Of a stretch of DNA of 64,000 bases, positions 848 to 38,354 are shown one piece after another. The DNA is taken from IMG/VR virus record IMGVR_UViG_3300036715_000626, positions 62,001 through 126,000 of that record; one strand, given 5' to 3'. Under the pieces are notes generated by a model that did not search any database, was not told the DNA's origin, and worked only from the letters and a program-made list of their open reading frames with translations. Made by a program: the position numbers and the translations under genes. Every line of letters starts with the position of its first letter. The first letter of the stretch is position 1.

Positions 848-872
848 TAGCTACTGGTATTACCAGTAGCTA
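848..872. terminator. palindromic intrinsic terminator
   Basis: TAGCTACTGGTA-T-TACCAGTAGCTA just after the stop of 898..1353. Confidence 0.7.
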
Positions 873-897
873 CATCTTTTATCAGTACATGGTGTAA

Positions 898-1353
898 TTA
901 TACCTTAGTCACATTAAGCAAAGTGAGTAGTTTAGTAACCATGTCCGGAGCTTGTTTTCTAAGCTGGTTGTTCTTATTAAAAACTCCAGCTACGCCATTC
1001 TTAACAAACTTATGTTTTTTGTCCTTAGGTATTCTATATGGTAAATTATCCACTTGTTGATAGACTCCCCAAACAGGACTATCCGTAACTTCAGAACACT
1101 TTTTAAAAGTACCAGTTTCTAAATTAACTACAATGCAACCTCTTTCACGTACCAACATCAAAGCTTTCTCTCTAGTAAAATTATCATCACCTGTAGTATT
1201 GATAACGTTCACTACGTCATTAACCATAACCTCACTATTACCAACTGAATCGGACCCATTTGTTGCATATAAAACATCTGCTTTACTACCGTATCTTGAG
1301 TGCAGTGTTATCTTTTTATTCTCAGTAAGCCTGTTGACTAATGCTGGTTTCAT
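898..1353 (-). CDS. hypothetical protein
   Basis: 151 aa ORF with AGGAAAG RBS, flanked by terminators. Confidence 0.7.
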   Translation of the reverse strand: MKPALVNRLTENKKITLHSRYGSKADVLYATNGSDSVGNSEVMVNDVVNVINTTGDDNFTREKALMLVRERGCIVVNLETGTFKKCSEVTDSPVWGVYQQVDNLPYRIPKDKKHKFVKNGVAGVFNKNNQLRKQAPDMVTKLLTLLNVTKV

Positions 1354-1376
1354 AACTTTCCTTTATTAAAAAATAC

Positions 1377-1412
1377 TGTAACTACTGGCAGGAAATCCTG
1401 CCAGTAGTTACA
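1377..1412. terminator. terminator of nvRNAP gene
   Basis: 17-bp inverted repeat overlapping the exon 2 stop, followed by a T-run on the minus strand. Confidence 0.75.
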
Positions 1413-1629
1413 TGTTAACTGTATTTAACAGTTTTGATATTGTATCATCTACTAGATTCTCCGAATCGTCGCTAAGATAATTAGATAAAATACTATTAGC
1501 AGGAGCTAATAAAGTTAAGTTACCTGATACGCTATATGGTTTGGATAAATCTGGGATATTGTAAAACGGTCTAAGTGTTTTAAACTCTTCTGTTAGAAGA
1601 TTATCTAACAAGATAGTGAAGTTTAATTC
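1408..1629 (-). CDS. non-virion RNAP beta' subunit, exon 2 (phiKZ gp56.1-like)
   Basis: ELNFTILLDN... continues the DFDGD motif of exon 1 in frame; exact 3' splice site uncertain (1629, 1632 or 1638). Confidence 0.75.
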   Translation of the reverse strand, partial: ELNFTILLDNLLTEEFKTLRPFYNIPDLSKPYSVSGNLTLLAPANSILSNYLSDDSENLVDDTISKLLNTVNM

Positions 1630-3484
1630 TCTCTTATTCACATAATACGTTACTATTACGTCGCGGCTTTACCCGCTGCTCGATCTTTCGACCGATGACT
1701 GTGTTTTACACAGAAAACCCTCTTAAGGGTGAGTAGACTATATCTTATTTTTGATTGTTTTGTGTTCAAGTCTTCTGATCTTAATATGGGGGTGATCAGA
1801 AAGACTCACTAATTCTTCTAAACTGTGTCTAAGTAAGTACGAGTTTATGTTTGATCTTGGATTACCAGCATCTTTAAATACTCCTAAATACATAGCTAAT
1901 CTGAAGTTACCAAATACATAAAATACTTGTTTACCTTCTTCTCTATTACTATCAATGACTTCATATGTAGCAGCACTAATATCTACATTGTATCTACTGT
2001 TTACTACCTCTTCTTCAGTATAGTTTTTCCAAGTAAAGTCATTAACAGATGATTTTATACCATAGCCTTTAATTATCCAAGACTCATTGCATGTAGACGA
2101 TTTAGCTAATGCCGTACTAATCCTGTGATTATTTACTTGGTTGGATACCGGCTCTTTTGTTAACAAGAAATCAGATACTTCATCAATAGTGTTTAACACT
2201 ATTTCTTCTTTAAGTGTATAATCATACAGATAGTAAAAATGATCTCTCTTGATATATGGTTTAGACAACCATGTTTCTCTTGCTAATATAACTTCTTCTT
2301 TATTAACACTGTTGGGTATTTTAGTAACATCCATAGTTGGAGTAACTAGATAACCCATGGTGTATATATAACCATCTCGATTAAGAAACTTAGATAAATA
2401 TCCAATGGACATACCTGTATTATAAGATACCAACATCATACTGTTATACATAGTCCATGTCTCATCAAGTACATCATATACCCACATCTCCACAGCAGCT
2501 TTACCACTGGTATTAACAGGTCCTAAAACAAACTTATCCTTTAGAGATATAATATACCTATTTAGAATAGGATACTTATCAGAATGTTTTATATGCGATA
2601 CGATAGCTAATGGATTGACATTCAAATATTTAGACATTCTACTAATAGACATAAAAGTTTTTTCAGTATTATCCAGTATATCTTTAACAGTGACTATTGC
2701 ACTGTTCGTCCATAACCCGCTATCAACTGCGTGATTGGTATTCTCTTTACGAGTATTCCAAGCCAAATTCCAAATCCTATTATTTTGTTTATTTCCATCT
2801 TCATGATTAACAGTTGGTTTATTTTCTGGATTAGGTATCCATGCTAAAGCAACCATTCTGTGTACTTTTCTAGGGTTCCTAGCTAAGGTATCAGATGTTA
2901 ATGTGGCGTTAACATAACCATCCGGATCTAGGCTTGTTTTTAAAAGCCCTCCAGTAATAACCCGCAGTCTACCTATATTACTAGCTTCGTAACCTTTATA
3001 CCCGAGCACTGGTTTCCAGAGTTCATTTTTTAATTCCTCCTCTGTATAAGGAATGTGTTTACTTCGTATTACCACTATATTCCTTTTTTAACAAACAACA
3101 CCCCCGTATTATTTGTTCCTTTTATAAAACAATCAAAATCCTTCCGTTTCGATTTAAGGGATTTGATACCCACCCACTTGGGCCCTACTCTACTCCGTTG
3201 AGTACTTATTAGTACCGAGAGCGTCTATAGCTCTCTCATACACTGTCGTGCGTCGTTTCGATAGTCGTTGAGCACATCTCTTCATCTTACATGCTAAGAG
3301 ACTTCGCTGCGTCGATTCCCAAATCCTGATGAGTTTTTACCATTCCTTTATTTCCATTATTACGGTTAAGGTTGTTATACTCTGTTTCCAGGTATAAGTG
3401 GTATCATCAAGCTCTAACGGGGTCCCCGCAATTAGGAAGGTTATTTTACTACGCATCACTGCGTAGGGAGACAAATTATTCTTT
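1630..3484 (-). mobile_element. group I intron (phage IA2-like) in nvRNAP beta', with homing endonuclease in P8
   Basis: P1: exon GGAGAU pairs IGS GUCUCC with the conserved U.G; P element AAUUGCGGGGA; Q AAUCGACGCAGC; R CUCAACGACUAUC; S AAGAUAUAGUCU; several P9 hairpins before exon 2. Confidence 0.9.
1738..3075 (-). CDS. intron-encoded NUMOD4-HNH homing endonuclease
   Basis: WKPVLGYKGYEASNIGRLR (NUMOD4); VHRMVALAW...VNHEDGNKQNNRIWNLAWNT (HNH_3); its TAG stop lies inside the intron S element. Confidence 0.9.
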   Translation of the reverse strand: MVIRSKHIPYTEEELKNELWKPVLGYKGYEASNIGRLRVITGGLLKTSLDPDGYVNATLTSDTLARNPRKVHRMVALAWIPNPENKPTVNHEDGNKQNNRIWNLAWNTRKENTNHAVDSGLWTNSAIVTVKDILDNTEKTFMSISRMSKYLNVNPLAIVSHIKHSDKYPILNRYIISLKDKFVLGPVNTSGKAAVEMWVYDVLDETWTMYNSMMLVSYNTGMSIGYLSKFLNRDGYIYTMGYLVTPTMDVTKIPNSVNKEEVILARETWLSKPYIKRDHFYYLYDYTLKEEIVLNTIDEVSDFLLTKEPVSNQVNNHRISTALAKSSTCNESWIIKGYGIKSSVNDFTWKNYTEEEVVNSRYNVDISAATYEVIDSNREEGKQVFYVFGNFRLAMYLGVFKDAGNPRSNINSYLLRHSLEELVSLSDHPHIKIRRLEHKTIKNKI

Positions 3485-4732
3485 ATCTCCATCAAAGTCA
3501 GCATTGGACGACTTAGCGATGAGACCCGAGATACCAATAGTGTTATCATAGGTATCTGTTTTAAACTTACCTATATACACTGCTTGTGATGAACCTTGTA
3601 GTAGACTTGGATTCCGTTGTGCTAAGACCATAATCTTTCTGTCAGGCGCTTCGTTAATGAGTTCCTGTAACAGTTCATCGATAAGCGGTATGTACCGTTT
3701 AACCGCGTCAAACAGCATGTTACTTGCTTTCTTATACGTCATTTTACGTTGATTAACCAACTTGTTTATAAGATGAGGTCTAAACGCAGTTACTCCGATA
3801 GCCCAAGGTACCCATATCTCGTCATGACGATGTTTACCAGGGATACTTGTAATAACTGATCTGAAAGTAAAATGTGATCTTGCTCCGTATACATGCTTAC
3901 GAAATAATCCTACTTTCTTAGTAATATACCGTTCATAGTAGTTATGATACAATGAAGCTAATTTAGAAATAACTACCGATGTATGAGATGCATTTTTACG
4001 ATGGCTTTGTTTCTCACTTGTAGAGTTAATCTTAATCCACGTCATAACAACATCAATAACATCCGATACCGCTAAGTTAATAAATTTACCTTTAGTGGTA
4101 TTTTCCATAACGAAGAGTTTCTTATTGATAATCGGTAAATAGTTACTGAAGATGAGATCCTTTTGATGGGTATACATGTCCAATAACAAATACAAGTTAT
4201 CTTGTTTATCGATATCTTTAAACTTAGCATGGTTCATCAGATACTGAATGATTTCAGGGAGTTTGATAATAAAGTTCTTATAAGAACGTTCTACCATAAT
4301 CTCTTTGATACCATGAGTAAAGTTTTGGAGTTCCACCGGTGGGTTATACATTGGATCAGTCATCCATCGTACATAATCGATTTTCTTATCGAGAATGTTA
4401 CGTAGCATCAACCAGTAAGCTGGGTTGATAAATTCTAACCCATCTTCTAATTTTTCTAACCAAAGCATAGGATCTACTTTTTCATGCACTTCTTTACAGA
4501 CAGTACCGCATGAACTACATACTTTTTCAAGTAGATAGCGACCTTTAAGGTTACCACAATCACAGGAAGGAATAGTAGATAGTATATCACTGTCATAAAC
4601 AGTAATCAGTTGGTTGTTAACTTCTTCGATGTCATCTACTGAGAAATGATCTAGGTTGTTAACGATTACTTTAAACCCTGTGGAGTGTGCGAAGAATTCG
4701 TCGAAATTGACTAAACGTTGTGTGATAGCCAT
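3485..4732 (-). CDS. non-virion RNAP beta' subunit, exon 1 (phiKZ gp55-like)
   Basis: Zn ribbon CDC...CSSC; RNPSL; catalytic NADFDGD immediately before the intron. Confidence 0.9.
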
Positions 4733-7049: not shown

Positions 7050-7123
7050 TGGTTAGACTAGACAGATTCAAACTGTCGACCTCTGTAGGGTGATACAGTG
7101 CTCTATCGCTGAGCTATAGCCTT
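7050..7123 (-). tRNA. tRNA-like RNA with CCA end and a non-canonical 6-nt anticodon loop
   Basis: AAGGCTA/TAGTCTA acceptor, GCTC/GAGC D stem, CTGTA-TCACCC-TACAG, GACAG-TTTGAAT-CTGTC, ACCA end. Confidence 0.75.
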
Positions 7124-7223: not shown

Positions 7224-7314
7224 TGGTGGGTGCGGTAGGATTCGAACCTACGACGTTTCTTTAAATGTGGTCGATTATGAGTCGACAGGGCTCGACCGCT
7301 GCCCGTACACACCC
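7224..7314 (-). tRNA. tRNA with CAT anticodon (elongator Met or Ile2), long variable region
   Basis: GGGTGTG/CGCACCC acceptor, GTCGA-CTCATAA-TCGAC, GTAGG-TTCGAAT-CCTAC, encoded ACCA. Confidence 0.85.
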
Positions 7315-7923: not shown

Positions 7924-9786
7924 TTAATAACGACCGAAACCCATATTAGAGTATCCGGTACCGAAGTTCGGCCCAGCGCTAATATTTTGACGAGCAAACC
8001 CAGAGGCATTTGTAATACCAGTGTTTTGATAGTGTTGTCCAACAAGACCGATATTGGTGTTTTCTGTAAACACGATTTCTGGTTCGTAACGAACATCAAG
8101 ACCGGCTGCTGTTGCTGCGTTTGCAAGAGTTGTGATAAAGTCAGCTGTGAATGTAACACGGATAGCTTTACCAGCGATTTCTGCATCAGGCATGATGCGA
8201 GATATGACATCTACACGATTGATAAATGGATCAGATCCACCATTCAAATCACGTGGAAGTGATGAGTAGACATATTTGTTCATAACCGCGGTATCACCAT
8301 TTTTAGCGCATACGAATGCCAAGTCGACATCACGGATATCGCGCTCACCAGATTTATCAGCCCAAACACCAGTAGGTACAACAACACCAGAAGTAGCGAA
8401 GATGTTACCGATTGGGAAATCTGATGGGAAGTTACCATCTGTCAACCAGTTAGCTGCTGCGATAAGCTCTTTAGCCGCTGCTGTTTTGTTTTCGTTGTTA
8501 CCCGGTTGGGCCGCCTGTGAGAATATCGAAAGATATGATGTTTGTGGTCCGAATGACGGAATATCCAAAGATACTACCGGCGCAAGACTGAACATTTGAC
8601 CAATGATCCCGTAGATTTCATCTGTGGTATTTTTCTTACTTGTAAGATCAAGTACCGCGCCGATACCATTAGGATTACCTTCAAGGTTGGTGATCATGTT
8701 CAATACACCTGGGGTACGATCGTTACGTGGAGTAAGAGCTGCCATCCACATATTCTTTTGAGTCATAACCATACCGGCGATCAAACCAAGAAGTGCGAAA
8801 CCTGTTGTAGGCATAGCCACCGCATCACTTGTAATCACAATATGTGGTTTAAGACGTAGTTGTGATACCATAGGCATACCTGGAACTTGCGTTTGAACAT
8901 TGTCAGGAATAGCATCGATATAACCAGAAACCGCAGCAAGTGTTTGACGACCAGTGTCAGCGTTCAACGAATGGAATTGTTGTTGTGTGTTAACACGTAA
9001 CAATTCGATACGCCAGTCTGTACGTACTGGGCGACCTGATTCATCACGAGATACAGGGTTACCCATATTTGACTCTATTTTAAGCATTGATTCACCAGAA
9101 CGACCGACCGCTTCACGGATATTCAAATCACGGGTTGTGCCGCTCGTAAGAGCTGCTTCTACGTTCAACGCGTTGAATGCAATTGGCGCGATACGACGCG
9201 CAAGCGTCGCAACATCTTCATGTGTAGCATGTACGACAAGACCGTCAACGGTGACAAATTCAGTATTTTCACCGTACTCTTTAGAAAGTGCAGATACGAT
9301 GATACGCATCAATTCAGAATCGATTGCGTCGTCAGTTGTGAAGATAAATGGACGAGTATTTGTTTTAATCGCTTGGTTAACTTCATTTGTGATTTCGATC
9401 GCTTTCATAGGACGGCGACCAGTGTCCTCGAGAAGTAACGTATAGTAGTTAACTACGCCGCCGTCCGATTTAGAAATCACGATAGTGCTGTACGCAATAC
9501 CAGTAAAAATTTCTTTGTCAATAACCGTCACACGAGGACGTTGTGCGGTTAGAATTGGTTTGAACGTTTCCAACAATGCGTTACCGATGTTCATAGTATA
9601 TTCTGAACCTTGGTTAGTGGACATTGTGTAAATGTCACGACCGCCAAAACCTATTCCCATAGGGGTTTGCATTTTAGCACCCATATTTGATTTAAGATCT
9701 GCAACTGCTGCGGCTGTTTGCGTAGCTCCTACTGAAGCACCTGCGTTTGGTTTTTGATTGTTGTTAGCATCTGAGTTTACACCCAT
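7924..9786 (-). CDS. chmA: phage nuclear shell protein chimallin (phiKZ gp54-like)
   Basis: 620 aa; flexible N- and C-terminal tails; G.PVR.D motif; lies upstream of nvRNAP beta' as in Chimalliviridae. Confidence 0.8.
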   Translation of the reverse strand: MGVNSDANNNQKPNAGASVGATQTAAAVADLKSNMGAKMQTPMGIGFGGRDIYTMSTNQGSEYTMNIGNALLETFKPILTAQRPRVTVIDKEIFTGIAYSTIVISKSDGGVVNYYTLLLEDTGRRPMKAIEITNEVNQAIKTNTRPFIFTTDDAIDSELMRIIVSALSKEYGENTEFVTVDGLVVHATHEDVATLARRIAPIAFNALNVEAALTSGTTRDLNIREAVGRSGESMLKIESNMGNPVSRDESGRPVRTDWRIELLRVNTQQQFHSLNADTGRQTLAAVSGYIDAIPDNVQTQVPGMPMVSQLRLKPHIVITSDAVAMPTTGFALLGLIAGMVMTQKNMWMAALTPRNDRTPGVLNMITNLEGNPNGIGAVLDLTSKKNTTDEIYGIIGQMFSLAPVVSLDIPSFGPQTSYLSIFSQAAQPGNNENKTAAAKELIAAANWLTDGNFPSDFPIGNIFATSGVVVPTGVWADKSGERDIRDVDLAFVCAKNGDTAVMNKYVYSSLPRDLNGGSDPFINRVDVISRIMPDAEIAGKAIRVTFTADFITTLANAATAAGLDVRYEPEIVFTENTNIGLVGQHYQNTGITNASGFARQNISAGPNFGTGYSNMGFGRY

Positions 9787-11104: not shown

Positions 11105-11109
11105 GAAAA

Positions 11110-11180
11110 AAATAGGCTGGATTCGAACCAGCGACCGATAGCCCTTGCGGGCTATAACTCTACCACTGAGCTACTATATA
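11110..11180 (-). ncRNA. anticodon-less tRNA-like small RNA
   Basis: TAGCTCAGTGGTAGAG D arm; ATAGCCC-GCAA-GGGCTAT in place of the anticodon arm; GCTGG-TTCGAAT-CCAGC T arm; weak acceptor, no CCA, ends in a T-run. Confidence 0.7.
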
Positions 11181-36500: not shown

Positions 36501-38281
36501 CCATACTGACTTGACAACGCCACAGTACCACGATCGATTTTACGTATAGGAAGATCCGCACGCATTTTTCTCATCGTATACGTATTACCGGCTAACTTGA
36601 AGGTTCCATCTTCGTTTACCTTCGGTAGTATAACTTTGATAGTAGATGGCTTACCATTAAGAGAAGTCATTTTAACAGTATGCGTTTCAGTTCCACCTAG
36701 AACAGATTCTTCTTCAACCACAGTATGTTCTTCTATAATATTACCAGTATTCTGAACTGCTTGGAAGGTTCTAACGATATCCTTATGCAGCTGTTCTTTA
36801 ATGTATTTTTTATCAATATTAACAACAGTATTGGTGTTGTATTCTTTATCAAAGACAACGGCGTTATCTTCAATTTTAGTATCTTGCTTAGAAACAGCAT
36901 AGTTATCTTTAGAAGTATCTAACAATCCACCCAGTGTAATATCATCATTCTCATATGGAGACTTAGCTTCATTTTGAGTTGTTATTATAGATTGTAATCG
37001 AGCAGATTCTTTCTTAGACATGTAGCCGGATTCACCAAGTACCGATATCTCAGTACTTAATTTATTAATAGGATCGATCTTTTCACTATAGAGAGCTGTT
37101 ATGGTACTTACAGTAGGTGCTGGGGCAATATTCTCTATAATATCATTAAGTTCAGAACTGGTTGTTTTAACAACCTCAGGTTCAGTATCCATATCATCAT
37201 CTGCGAGATCATTACTCTCTACGACGTCATCATTTTTCTCAGGTATGTTTTTATCAAGAACTGAATCGATGTCCACAACAGTAGTTGTGTCACCCACAAC
37301 AGTAGTTTTATCTGTAAGTTCGGTTTTACCAGTAGCTGTGACATCAGATAGTTTAATGGCGATATCTTTATCGTCTTTATCATTAGCGATAGTATCTAGA
37401 GATTCAGATTTACCATTCAGTGTTCTGAATAACATCACGTACAATAACTTACGAACAGTAGCTGCTTTATACTTAGCTAACTTACCTAAACGAGTTTCAG
37501 TGGTGTATTCAGCAACGATACTGGATAACACATTTAGATTAACCATAACTAACTTATTGTCTAGATTCAATAACAATGTTACTTTGTCTAACATACCGTT
37601 ATCGATTTTACTAAATATACTCGACTCTTTTAATTCAGGGGTTAAATACTTCCAGAGTTCTAATACATTCATATACCGATAATCGGTAAAGATATTTAAA
37701 GAACTTCTTGACAGATTAGCTGCGGCTCTGTCAAATTGTTGTCTGGATGGTAATGATGGCGGTAGATCCAGCAATATAAAAACATTACGATCAGTTACAT
37801 ATTTGTTACCACTAGTATTTGCAATTACCGTTTCCATAACATTACTATACTTGTAGTATTCCGCTAACGGGTTAATTACATACTTATACATATGGTTAAG
37901 AGAACCATAGTTAATAACTAAAAGATCCCTAGATAACATAGGAACTGTTTTAACATTTGGTTTAATAAACTTAAAGATCTTTTCATTTTTAGATATTTCT
38001 GTAATTACCGATAACGGAGTTAAGTTCAAATGTCGAAAATGCCCCAATAGCGGAATTTCAGGATACGTCAATATAGTATCTACAAAAAGCTTACCAGGTA
38101 TCTTATCGAAATAAGCATACTCTTTAGTCGGGTTAACTGTTAGATCAGATACTTTTGACCAATGAAAGATGGTGTCCAATGGAAATATAAATTCTTTAGC
38201 ATTTAGGATTACTGGTTCCAGAAAGTTAGATATCTTTCTAATACCGTATTTTCGATAGTGTTGTTCAAAGTGTAATAACAT
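33575..38281 (-). CDS. virion RNAP beta subunit (phiKZ gp178-like) with C-terminal nucleotidyltransferase-like domain
   Basis: TYLGHGGRS; G.VSESSPDSGDVG; NFVNIQNSH; FEDS; GDK...NQLK motifs; extension GS-x12-DLD. Confidence 0.9.
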   Translation of the reverse strand: MLLHFEQHYRKYGIRKISNFLEPVILNAKEFIFPLDTIFHWSKVSDLTVNPTKEYAYFDKIPGKLFVDTILTYPEIPLLGHFRHLNLTPLSVITEISKNEKIFKFIKPNVKTVPMLSRDLLVINYGSLNHMYKYVINPLAEYYKYSNVMETVIANTSGNKYVTDRNVFILLDLPPSLPSRQQFDRAAANLSRSSLNIFTDYRYMNVLELWKYLTPELKESSIFSKIDNGMLDKVTLLLNLDNKLVMVNLNVLSSIVAEYTTETRLGKLAKYKAATVRKLLYVMLFRTLNGKSESLDTIANDKDDKDIAIKLSDVTATGKTELTDKTTVVGDTTTVVDIDSVLDKNIPEKNDDVVESNDLADDDMDTEPEVVKTTSSELNDIIENIAPAPTVSTITALYSEKIDPINKLSTEISVLGESGYMSKKESARLQSIITTQNEAKSPYENDDITLGGLLDTSKDNYAVSKQDTKIEDNAVVFDKEYNTNTVVNIDKKYIKEQLHKDIVRTFQAVQNTGNIIEEHTVVEEESVLGGTETHTVKMTSLNGKPSTIKVILPKVNEDGTFKLAGNTYTMRKMRADLPIRKIDRGTVALSSQYGKLFVTNATFKKDDIGYWFRKQLIAKYEVDNKLKDIVMLTIENIDAVLPEDYNIISRYIKAFRYGNISFSFDYYNRKKMIKDLTDDMLKGIEDNGTVMVGTVGTTPVVMDMNSKLYRYEGKKYHEIDDIFKMLNIHKDSGPIEYANVRIYKEQFPVGFLLAYYIGFDNLIHLLKPEFRIVPMSVRTTIAANEYVVTFKDYKYIFEKTHKQADMVFYGLSTMNTTLVSVPKDTLNTRSKFANIFNLMKLSILYINEIKLLEEMFIDPTTMTILEQLKQPVNFKGMLLKAVDLLSDDNYNNPNNITEMSIKGYERISAILYSELVNSIKEHRNRSFFSRSKMTVYPYAVVNKIDQDSTTVMVDDLNPITIVKQAETITYLGHGGRSKEGMSRDTREMHSSEIGLVSESSPDSGDVGISAYMSANPNLSNTRGIVGNFDIDANGFSSILSTSSMLAPFAITEDVKRLNFVNIQNSHTIPMINMRAPFVRTGYEAILPIKAAGKYVKIARTDGIVTKVTKSEIVVMYSDKKQERIKLSSWTTKEESGSCYTHYMTTSLIVGDTVVKDDTLAYATSFFEPDVFNRKRVIYKSGIYVNVALMEDIQTFEDSAAISKRMNQEMAATVTKVKSIIVSNTDNIIGIKPKGTLLEPSDVLFTITDGISINGKELDERALAILQNLKNVSPKAKLRGTISKIVVYYNCELDTMSKSLQDLIALTDEDLKHDVGQTGRVNSTYRVNGTSLLPDQVEIKIYIQVLDTMGIGDKAILGNQLKFTVGEVYEYDMKTMDNKEIDLVFSNTSIKARIVNSPDLIGTTSTLLSVITDKALDMYFGDVATEGLKEVDKTSKDVISKRVKSLLDELKTFCSEHDVPKNSIVLFGSIVLGIHGLRYPNDLDIGIKKDVFEKIQKELNKPNCKPGSECAQLDIGNLSFIHEIAVPNVNDKSLFSIDGTTIDGFKVITFDQWKEMQKKDPLKKDAKFL

Positions 38282-38354
38282 AGTTATCCTTTAGTCTTCT
38301 TCAATAATGACCGTCGATATCATTATTTTTTGATTACTAACAAAAGGAAATATT

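What the first reader, a model, noticed from the sequence alone, without database searches (positions are those of the whole stretch)
1630..3484. Group I intron at the RNAP catalytic DFDGD whose best 3' splice site ends in A (omega-A)
Seen: P1 fixes the 5' splice site after GGAGAU (3485). The 3' end reads ...UAUGUG AAU AAG AGA GAA UUA AAC. Restoring DFDGD-x-LN (DFDGD-ELN) needs the intron to end ...AAGAGA, i.e. in A. The 3' exon start GAAUUA also pairs with IGS UAAUUU (P10), and CUC after P7 could pair GAG (P9.0). The omega-G alternatives insert R (exon from 1632) or NKR (from 1638) beside the catalytic loop. The P7 G-site looks canonical (ACGACUA/UAGUCU). Known: introns at this motif occur in phiKZ-like phages; omega-A is rare (described for a Coxiella 23S rRNA intron).
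Basis: partly seen in the sequence, partly recalled or inferred. Interest (0 to 1): 0.7.

Follow-up and report, generated by a model that had tools for sequence, protein, structure and literature searches.

The report
Phage RNA polymerase intron ending in A
A mobile self-splicing (group I) intron sits right after the catalytic DFDGD motif of a jumbo phage RNA polymerase gene and ends in A rather than the near-universal G, and three related introns in other phage contigs do the same, which points to a small inherited lineage rather than a one-off defect.

Summary

- **The intron.** Window 3484..1630 (minus strand, 1855 nt) is a group I intron. It carries an HNH/NUMOD4 homing-endonuclease ORF in the P8 loop. 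It lies directly after the GAU codon of the last Asp of NADFDGD, in a phiKZ-gp55-like RNA polymerase beta' subunit of a chimallin-encoding jumbo phage.
- **Empty site.** A 98-99% identical contig (L002) and contigs from two microbial-mat runs join 3485 directly to 1629. There is no sliding ambiguity, so the inserted DNA ends in A1630.
- **Protein evidence.** All 42 motif-bearing full-length homologs read D[FY]DGD-[EA][LMIV]N. None has an R or NKR insertion.
- **RNA pairings.** P10 (6 bp) and P9.0 (CUC/GAG) both place A1630 at the omega position.
- **New finding.** Ten introns in homologs of this gene form one family with the window's intron. Three of them also end in A. One sits at the same site; two sit after QRN|P. 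In the best tree the four omega-A introns group together, but with weak support.
- **G-binding site.** The helix is identical in omega-A and omega-G members. I infer that 3' splice-site choice leans on P9.0 and P10.

Novelty: a new variant of a known kind. Splicing itself remains untested.

The parts
3485..4732 (-). Exon 1 of the RNA polymerase beta'-like subunit (phiKZ gp55 type). It has 416 codons and ends NADFDGD. In the unspliced RNA the frame runs on into the intron as K-E-stop.
   Evidence: ORF. Pfam RNA_pol_Rpb1_2 E 4.1e-5, 24.3 bits, just under the 25.3-bit cut-off. tblastn hits at 30-37% identity to jumbo-phage genes annotated as nvRNAP beta'. 309 homologs.
1630..3484 (-). The group I intron, 1855 nt. 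It starts AAAGAA and ends AAGAGA, so omega is A1630.
   Evidence: Intron-less alleles skip exactly 1630-3484, with 'both' = 0. L002 shows the joined form. Rfam RF00028 partial hits.
3467..3478 (-). Internal guide sequence. GUCUCC (3472-3467) pairs with exon GGAGAU (3490-3485) to form P1 with a U.G pair at the 5' splice site. UAAUUU (3478-3473) pairs with exon 2 GAAUUA (1629-1624) to form P10.
   Evidence: Sequence. Register scan: 6 bp at the annotated site, at most 3 bp elsewhere. Coordinates.
3076..3466 (-). 5' ribozyme core: P2 (3466-3449), P3 CCUUCC (3440-3435), P4-P6 with a long P5 extension, J6/7-P7 ACGACUA (3268-3262), several extra hairpins between P7 and P3' (P7.1/P7.2-like), P3' GGAAGG (3145-3140) and the P8 5' strand (3138-3126).
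   Evidence: Rfam alignment. Hand assignment and coordinates. P3 covaries with L168 (CCUCUC/GAGAGG) and with L002.
1738..3075 (-). Homing-endonuclease ORF of 445 aa with a GTG start, lying in the P8 loop. Its last codons run through the P8 3' strand and J8/7, and its UAG stop is the first three bases of the P7 3' strand.
   Evidence: ORF. Pfam NUMOD4 29.0 bits and HNH_3 27.0 bits, both above their cut-offs. 32% identical to the endonuclease of the sister intron in L002.
1735..1761 (-). P8 3' strand AAAACAAUCAAAA (1761-1749), J8/7, and P7 3' strand UAGUCU (1740-1735). The latter holds the C of the G-C pair that forms the guanosine-binding site.
   Evidence: Sequence. It is identical in omega-A and omega-G family members.
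1630..1733 (-). 3' domain: P9.0 5' strand CUC (1733-1731), hairpins P9 to P9.4 (1730-1640), tail GAAUAA, P9.0 3' strand GAG (1633-1631) and the terminal A (1630).
   Evidence: Hairpins covary across ten introns: 18 of 21 pairs show compensatory changes. P9.0 register test. Omega-A sits at tail position 10-11, and omega-G at position 9-10 in the nine family members aligned; L006_Q has a 13-nt tail and is not in that alignment.
1408..1629 (-). Exon 2: 73 codons plus stop, ELNFTILLDNLLTEEFKTLRPFYNI... The spliced protein is 489 aa.
   Evidence: Homologs are 483-508 aa and carry the same continuation. L002:6405-6722 encodes it contiguously.

Best explanation
This is a mobile group I intron. It is IA-like, with extra hairpins between P7 and P3', and carries an HNH/NUMOD4 endonuclease gene in the P8 loop. 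It is inserted between the last Asp codon of NADFDGD and the following Glu codon of the beta'-type subunit of a nucleus-forming (chimallin-encoding) jumbo phage.

Shown:
- The inserted DNA is exactly 3484..1630 and ends in A.
- The empty site exists in near-identical phage DNA.
- The only exon junction compatible with all homologs is 3485|1629.
- P1, P10 and P9.0 all fit that junction.
- The intron belongs to a structurally constrained family in which four members carry A at the omega position.

Inferred:
- The RNA self-splices by the usual two transesterifications.
- Exogenous G attacks after the U.G pair of P1. The G-C pair of the guanosine site in P7 is unchanged, which fits this.
- The freed exon 1 then attacks the phosphate 3' of A1630.
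- Because A fits a G-C site poorly, the 3' splice site is probably positioned mainly by P9.0 (CUC/GAG) and by the 6-bp P10 that abuts P1. Exon ligation may be slower than in omega-G relatives.
- The endonuclease presumably nicks or cuts the intron-less allele, such as the one in L002, and drives homing during co-infection.
For: - Intron-less joint 1629|3485 in DNA contigs of two runs, 'both' = 0. It is readable in L002, whose flanks are 98-99.7% identical.
- 42 of 42 motif-bearing full-length homologs have no insertion after D[FY]DGD. Profile scores favour ELN by 6-9 bits.
- P1 with a U.G pair; P10 is 6 bp against at most 3 bp in other registers.
- The P9.0 register is supported family-wide, 17 of 20 pairs against 4-8 of 20 when slid. 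Compensatory changes are seen: WIN CU/AG, L002 GC/GC, L166 AG/CU, L170 AC/GU.
- Sister introns end in A. L002 4572-6374 has the window itself as its empty site. L165 5126-5667 has no G within 10 nt of its end. L168 5276-5759 ends in A under the U.G rule.
- The ORF-less members L165_Q and L168_D pass Rfam's cut-off.
- The four omega-A introns plus one omega-G intron form a clade with 95/97 support. The pairs WIN+L168 (89/92) and L002+L165_Q (100/100) have diverged to 67-70% core identity, so A at omega has persisted.
- The 3' domain covaries.
- HNH_3 and NUMOD4 domains are present. A chimallin-like ORF is in the same genome.
Against: - There is no RNA evidence. No RNA run holds the sequence, so splicing at A1630, or splicing at all, has not been observed.
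- Base 1630 is seen in only one assembly. The only contig found with the intron-plus allele is the window's own source.
- The guanosine-binding helix is canonical and shows no omega-A-specific change. From what is known of the Tetrahymena ribozyme (my own knowledge), this predicts a poor second step with A.
- The window alone scores below Rfam's gathering threshold.
- The L168 boundary has a sliding ambiguity (GAA at both ends). A register with omega-G exists there if the 5' exon ended in G.
- Runs X1 and X2 and L002 may come from the same study as the window, so the empty-site evidence may be population-level and not independent.
Confidence: 0.82

Rival explanations
1. The intron splices at a canonical omega-G: G1633, giving DFDGD-R-ELN, or G1639, giving DFDGD-NKR-ELN. 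The polymerase would tolerate the extra residues beside the catalytic loop.
For: Both are in frame and end in G. The guanosine-binding site is canonical.
Against: No homolog has such an insertion, 0 of 42. The intron-less allele lacks these codons. P10 is only 3 bp and 2 bp in those registers. The P9.0 register and tail length match omega at 1630. The sister intron L165_Q has no G within 10 nt of its end. The profile score is 6-9 bits lower.
Confidence: 0.06
2. The intron does not splice. Either the gene is inactivated, or the subunit is made as two polypeptides: exon 1 ending DFDGDKE, and exon 2 starting from GTG 1641. Jumbo-phage polymerases are already split into several subunits.
For: A GTG-initiated ORF 1641..1408 exists, and exon 1 has its own stop. 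Base A at omega would slow ligation (my own knowledge).
Against: There is no Shine-Dalgarno-like sequence before GTG 1641. The ribozyme core, P9.0 and P10 are conserved and covary, including exon-side changes that keep P10 in the sister introns. Full-length relatives are contiguous across this point. A split directly after the Mg-binding Asp triad has no precedent among the homologs retrieved here.
Confidence: 0.06
3. A1630 is an assembly or sequencing error, or a very recent deleterious G-to-A mutation in one genome.
For: Only one assembly covers the intron's 3' end.
Against: Three related introns from independent assemblies (JGI, Logan, ENA) also end in A at the homologous tail position. They have diverged to 55-70% core identity.
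Confidence: 0.04

Closest known systems
Coxiella burnetii 23S rRNA intron Cbu.L1917 (Raghavan et al. 2007, J Bacteriol 189:6572)
   Same: A natural group I intron whose last nucleotide is A instead of omega-G. It is reported to self-splice. [quoted passage not shown] The details are from my own memory, because the paper is not held.
   Different: That intron is in an rRNA gene of a bacterium and is a single element. Here the host is a protein-coding gene of a phage, so the reading frame and an empty-site allele fix the junction independently. The trait is shared by four diverged introns at two sites, and an HNH endonuclease is present.
PhiPA3 gp210 intron in the virion RNA polymerase beta-subunit gene (Birkholz et al. 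2024, PMC11620839)
   Same: A putative group I intron with an HNH homing endonuclease, inserted immediately after conserved catalytic Asp residues of a chimallivirus multisubunit RNA polymerase gene. An intron-less homolog in a competitor phage is the target.
   Different: It is in a different subunit (beta, not beta') and at a different motif. Nothing unusual is reported about its 3' terminal nucleotide.
Phage IA2-type introns with HNH nicking endonucleases (SPO1/SP82 I-HmuI, Bastille I-BasI, Pf-WMP3 I-PfoP3I)
   Same: Phage group I introns in essential polymerase genes. They have extra helices between P7 and P3', an HNH endonuclease ORF in a peripheral loop, and a P10 of 4 bp or more (PMC3428280).
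   Different: Those introns end in G. The host genes are DNA polymerases.
Engineered Tetrahymena ribozyme with an altered guanosine site (Michel et al. 1989; Been and Perrotta 1991) - from my own knowledge
   Same: It shows that a group I intron can use A at the omega position.
   Different: That required changing the G-C pair of the binding site to A-U. Here the G-C pair and its neighbours are unchanged.

Membership tests
Group I intron (Rfam RF00028) | P1 helix with a U.G wobble pair at the 5' splice site | tested here: met
   GGAGAU / GUCUCC with U3485.G.
Group I intron (Rfam RF00028) | Conserved core P3-P8 with J6/7-P7 and J8/7-P7' consensus, scoring above the family threshold | tested here: inconclusive
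   The window scores 32.2 bits (E 7e-6) and 17.8 bits, below the 50-bit cut-off, because a 1.3-kb ORF splits the core. ORF-less sister introns of the same family score 59.5, 56.6 and 51.2 bits. Core motifs are identical.
Group I intron (Rfam RF00028) | 3'-terminal guanosine (omega-G) | tested here: not met
   The last intron base is A1630, as shown by the empty-site allele, the homologs, P10 and P9.0. The Coxiella precedent shows that this feature is near-universal, not absolute.
Group I intron (Rfam RF00028) | G-C pair in P7 forming the guanosine-binding site | tested here: met
   ACGACUA / UAGUCU, identical to omega-G relatives.
Group I intron (Rfam RF00028) | Self-splicing with ligated exons | not testable with these tools
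   No RNA run holds the locus.
Subgroup IA2 | P7.1 and P7.2 helices between P7 and P3' | tested here: inconclusive
   About 115 nt with several hairpins lie between P7 (3262) and P3' (3145). Helices were assigned by hand only.
Mobile (homing) intron | Intron-plus and intron-minus alleles with identical flanks in one population, plus an intron-encoded endonuclease | tested here: met
   L002 and the X1/X2 contigs carry the empty site, and the flanks are identical for at least 70 nt. X1 also holds endonuclease-gene pieces at 100% identity. The ORF has HNH_3 and NUMOD4 domains. Cleavage activity was not tested.
HNH homing endonuclease (I-HmuI-like) | HNH_3 catalytic motif with NUMOD DNA-binding modules | tested here: met
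   PF13392 27.0 bits (cut-off 24.8) and PF07463 29.0 bits (cut-off 23.4).
Multisubunit RNA polymerase beta' (jumbo-phage non-virion type, phiKZ gp55-like) | NADFDGD Mg-binding motif within Rpb1 domain 2, and homology to annotated phage subunits | tested here: met
   The motif is at codons 410-416. Pfam PF00623 gives 24.3 bits, just under the 25.3-bit cut-off for exon 1 alone. tblastn hits reach 1e-46 to 4e-82 among listed records, including genes annotated as nvRNAP beta'. N, D, D, G and D are invariant in 42 homologs.

The most novel reading that the evidence does not exclude
A whole lineage of phage group I introns has replaced the near-universal 3'-terminal G by A. It has at least four members, at two sites of the same polymerase gene, in phages whose beta' proteins are only 49-59% identical. 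The lineage still splices accurately with an unchanged G-C guanosine-binding site. On this reading omega-G is dispensable in nature when P9.0 and a strong P10 position the 3' splice site. The slower second step might even be used to time polymerase production inside the phage nucleus.
Probability: 0.5. Interest if true: 0.75.

Novelty: new variant of a known kind. Interest (0 to 1): 0.6.

Why it matters
Omega-G is treated as a rule of group I intron chemistry and is used as a rule for annotating boundaries. To my knowledge the only described natural exception is one rRNA intron of Coxiella.

This case is unusually well constrained. The junction is fixed by a reading frame through a catalytic motif, by an empty-site allele and by 42 homologs. 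The trait is also inherited across diverged introns. Together these give a natural test bed for asking how exon ligation works without omega-G.

There is also a practical point. Gene callers that insist on a terminal G would add R or NKR beside the active site, or leave the subunit split. The data further show very dense intron traffic around NADFDGD and QRN|P in this gene family, including what appears to be a move of one intron lineage between two sites 126 nt apart.

Tried and rejected
- **Close relatives in phage records.** Megablast of the locus against phage records gave nothing. A distant blastn of the 3' domain gave nothing, and the 5' core gave only weak Vibrio, Shewanella and other phage intron matches.
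- **Exact junction search.** There were no hits in viral contigs or metagenome contigs.
- **The search for related loci.** The single-protein query found nothing. With the alignment, the patterns required an intact NADFDGD, so they returned mostly intron-less or cellular genes. Only L006 was useful.
- **RNA evidence.** No RNA run holds the locus. X4 and X5 are only related-protein runs, and X4 matched other introns.
- **Independent read of base 1630.** An exact look-up of the endonuclease gave nothing. The exon 1 product returned only the window's own source contig.
- **Compensating change in the guanosine site.** None found. The only omega-A-specific columns are omega itself, two positions in the P9.2 stem and one in a P6 loop.
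- **Strong P10 only in omega-A introns.** Rejected. The omega-G intron L170 also has a 6-bp P10.
- **Second intron in the genome.** A weak hit at window 38208-38351 (11.2 bits) was not reproduced.
- **MFE folding of an ORF-less mini-intron.** It cannot show the P3/P7 pseudoknot, so helices were assigned by hand.
- **Literature.** Raghavan 2007 and Hicks 2011 are not held. A search for other non-G omega cases found nothing relevant.
- **Contigs that ended too early.** L167 and L171 end before exon 2.

Full report
**What is there.** The gene lies on the minus strand.

- An ORF from 4732 to 3476 encodes 416 residues ending NADFDGD, followed by K, E and a stop.
- It matches RNA_pol_Rpb1_2 (E 4.1e-5). 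tblastn finds 315 jumbo-phage records at under 37% identity, several annotated as the non-virion RNA polymerase beta' subunit.
- The window is part of a 205-kb IMG/VR virus record with terminal repeats. That record also encodes a chimallin-like protein, so this is an uncultured nucleus-forming jumbo phage.
- Downstream lie a 445-aa ORF with NUMOD4 and HNH_3 domains (3075..1738) and a 77-codon frame (1641..1408) that reads (V)NKRELNFTILLDN....

**It is a group I intron.** Rfam's RF00028 model aligns to 3494-3177 (32.2 bits, E 7e-6) and to 1889-1715 (17.8 bits). This is a split match, as expected when a large ORF sits inside the core. I assigned the following by hand:

- P1: GGAGAU / GUCUCC, with U3485.G.
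- P2: 3466-3449.
- P3 / P3': CCUUCC / GGAAGG.
- P4 to P6, with a long P5 extension.
- P7: ACGACUA / UAGUCU.
- Several hairpins between P7 and P3', as in IA-type phage introns.
- P8: a perfect 13-bp helix whose loop holds the endonuclease ORF.
- A 3' domain of five hairpins, then the tail GAAUAAGAGA.

The ORF's UAG stop is the start of the P7 3' strand.

**The 3' boundary.** The decisive result came from laying public contigs on the locus. Two microbial-mat DNA runs each hold a contig that joins 1629 directly to 3485, skipping 1855 bases, with no base that could belong to either side.

The same form is readable in L002, a 9.2-kb JGI contig that is 98-99.7% identical to the window. It reads ...GACTTTGATGGAGAT|GAATTAAACTTC... 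and encodes ...NADFDGDELNFTILLDN... without interruption. The exons are identical for at least 70 nt on both sides. Run X1 also holds 100%-identical pieces of the endonuclease gene, so both alleles occur in one sample.

The inserted element is therefore exactly 3484..1630, and its last base is A.

**Protein evidence.** Of the 120 listed homologs, 42 are full length with the motif. All 42 read D[FY]DGD followed at once by [EA][LMIV]N (ELN in 30), and none has an extra R or NKR. N417 and D423 of that stretch are invariant. A profile of these proteins scores the omega-A product at 767.2 bits, the G1633 product at 760.8, the G1639 product at 758.1 and the G1631 frameshift at 664.0.

**RNA evidence for the register.** The guide sequence UAAUUU, immediately 5' of the G of the U.G pair, pairs with the first six bases of exon 2. 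Every other register from -6 to +6 gives at most 3 bp. CUC, two bases after P7', pairs with GAG just before A1630 (P9.0).

**A family of related introns, some with A.** Many homologs in the protein search are truncated at NA, NAD, NG, DFDG, DFDGD or QRN, which indicates introns at many positions. I fetched contigs for a sample and defined ten more introns by the protein alignment. All share these features:

- J6/7-P7 reads GUUCAACGACUAUC, with G[CU]UC in two members.
- J8/7-P7' reads GAUAUAGUCU.
- The same series of 3' hairpins.
- A tail beginning GAA (AAA in L168).

The terminal base at each site is as follows.

| Site | Ends in A | Ends in G |
|---|---|---|
| After DFDGD | window; L168 | L004, L006, L165, L166, L170 |
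| After QRN\|P | L002; L165 | L006, L169 |

- For L002 the window itself is the empty site, and there is again no sliding ambiguity.
- For L165_Q there is no G within 10 nt of the end.
- For L168 the ends share GAA. A register with omega-G exists if the 5' exon ended in G, but the U.G rule and a 5-bp P10 favour A.
- The ORF-less L165_Q and L168_D score 59.5 and 56.6 bits for RF00028, above the cut-off.
- After the last hairpin, omega-A lies at tail position 10-11. Omega-G lies at position 9-10 in the aligned relatives.

**Covariation.** Across ten introns, P9.0 forms 17 of 20 possible pairs in the annotated register and 4-8 of 20 when slid by 1-4 bases. It shows double changes such as CU/AG, GC/GC, AG/CU, AU/AU and AC/GU. 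The 3' hairpins show compensatory changes in 18 of 21 predicted pairs.

At the QRN|P site, the two omega-A introns are followed by CCU UCN, which pairs with the guide AAGG. The intron-less allele and the omega-G introns have CCA AGY or CCC AGC instead. The exon side of P10 therefore travels with the intron.

**Descent.** An IQ-TREE analysis of the cores was run with omega and P9.0 removed.

- The four omega-A introns plus one omega-G intron (L165_D) form a clade with 95/97 support.
- WIN+L168 are paired at 89/92, and L002+L165_Q at 100/100.
- The best tree has the four omega-A introns as one group, but only at 50/10 support.
- One origin is therefore compatible with the data but not shown.
- Either way, A at omega has persisted through divergence to 55-70% core identity. 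It has also persisted through a change of insertion site within the gene, and through gain or loss of the endonuclease ORF. The two endonucleases are 32% identical.

**Mechanism.** The guanosine-binding helix and its flanks are the same in omega-A and omega-G members. The only columns specific to the omega-A group are omega itself, two positions in the P9.2 stem and one in a P6 loop.

I infer that the first step uses exogenous G as usual. I also infer that the second step relies on P9.0 and P10 to place the phosphate 3' of A1630. From what is known of the Tetrahymena ribozyme (my own knowledge), ligation is probably slower than with omega-G. None of this has been observed: no RNA run holds the locus, and base 1630 is covered by a single assembly.

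**Comparison with the known.**
- Mobile group I introns with HNH endonucleases next to catalytic Asp residues of chimallivirus polymerase genes are known. An example is PhiPA3 gp210 in the beta subunit (PMC11620839).
- A terminal A is known from one Coxiella rRNA intron. I saw the title only; the details are from memory.
- What is new here is the combination. The case is in a protein-coding gene where frame, homologs and an empty site fix the junction. The trait is also shared by several diverged phage introns with an unchanged G-site.

I rate it a new variant of a known kind, of moderate to good interest for ribozyme and phage-intron specialists. It is also a practical warning for annotation.

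Noticed in passing
L002:4572-6374 (equivalent to window 3611|3610): The 98-99% identical phage in L002 lacks the DFDGD intron. Instead it carries a related omega-A intron with its own HNH endonuclease, 126 nt upstream, after ...AQRN|P. The two variants are each intron-plus at one site and intron-minus at the other.
   Followed up: yes
window 849-1365 (ORF 898-1353, minus strand): A 151-aa ORF just downstream of the polymerase gene is absent from L002, where 6764 abuts 6771. This is a presence/absence polymorphism of a small gene.
   Followed up: partly
window 11108-11180 (minus strand): A tRNA scoring 46.5 bits in Rfam, for which ARAGORN reports 'tRNA-???' with a two-letter anticodon (ca). The anticodon loop has an unusual size.
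   Followed up: no
window 7053-7123 and 7224-7314 (minus strand): tRNA-Met is 91 nt long with a long insertion after the anticodon stem. A further tRNA-like gene at 7053-7123 was missed in the window scan. It scored 43.7 bits in the identical stretch L002:1063-1133.
   Followed up: partly
window about 8083-8850 (minus strand, within a 640-aa frame): A chimallin-like protein (PF25677, 30.2 bits). In relatives (L004, L165, L168, L169) chimallin lies directly upstream of the beta' gene.
   Followed up: partly
homologs P0002-P0120: Truncated products show introns at many different codon positions within N-A-D-F-D-G-D (after NA, NAD, NG, DFDG and DFDGD) and after QRN. L006 and L165 each carry two introns in this one gene.
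   Followed up: partly
L004, L165 (5794-7251), L170: In several omega-G relatives the endonuclease ORF lies upstream of the ribozyme core (P1 loop in L004 and L170, between P1 and the core in L165_D), not in P8. L166 and L169 appear similar. In L166 the guide GUCUCC mismatches the local exon GGUGAU at one position.
   Followed up: partly
run X4 on window 3055-3405: A wastewater library holds very deep contigs (word depth 400-900) that are 85-95% similar to the 5' core of this intron. Relatives of this intron family therefore seem abundant elsewhere.
   Followed up: no
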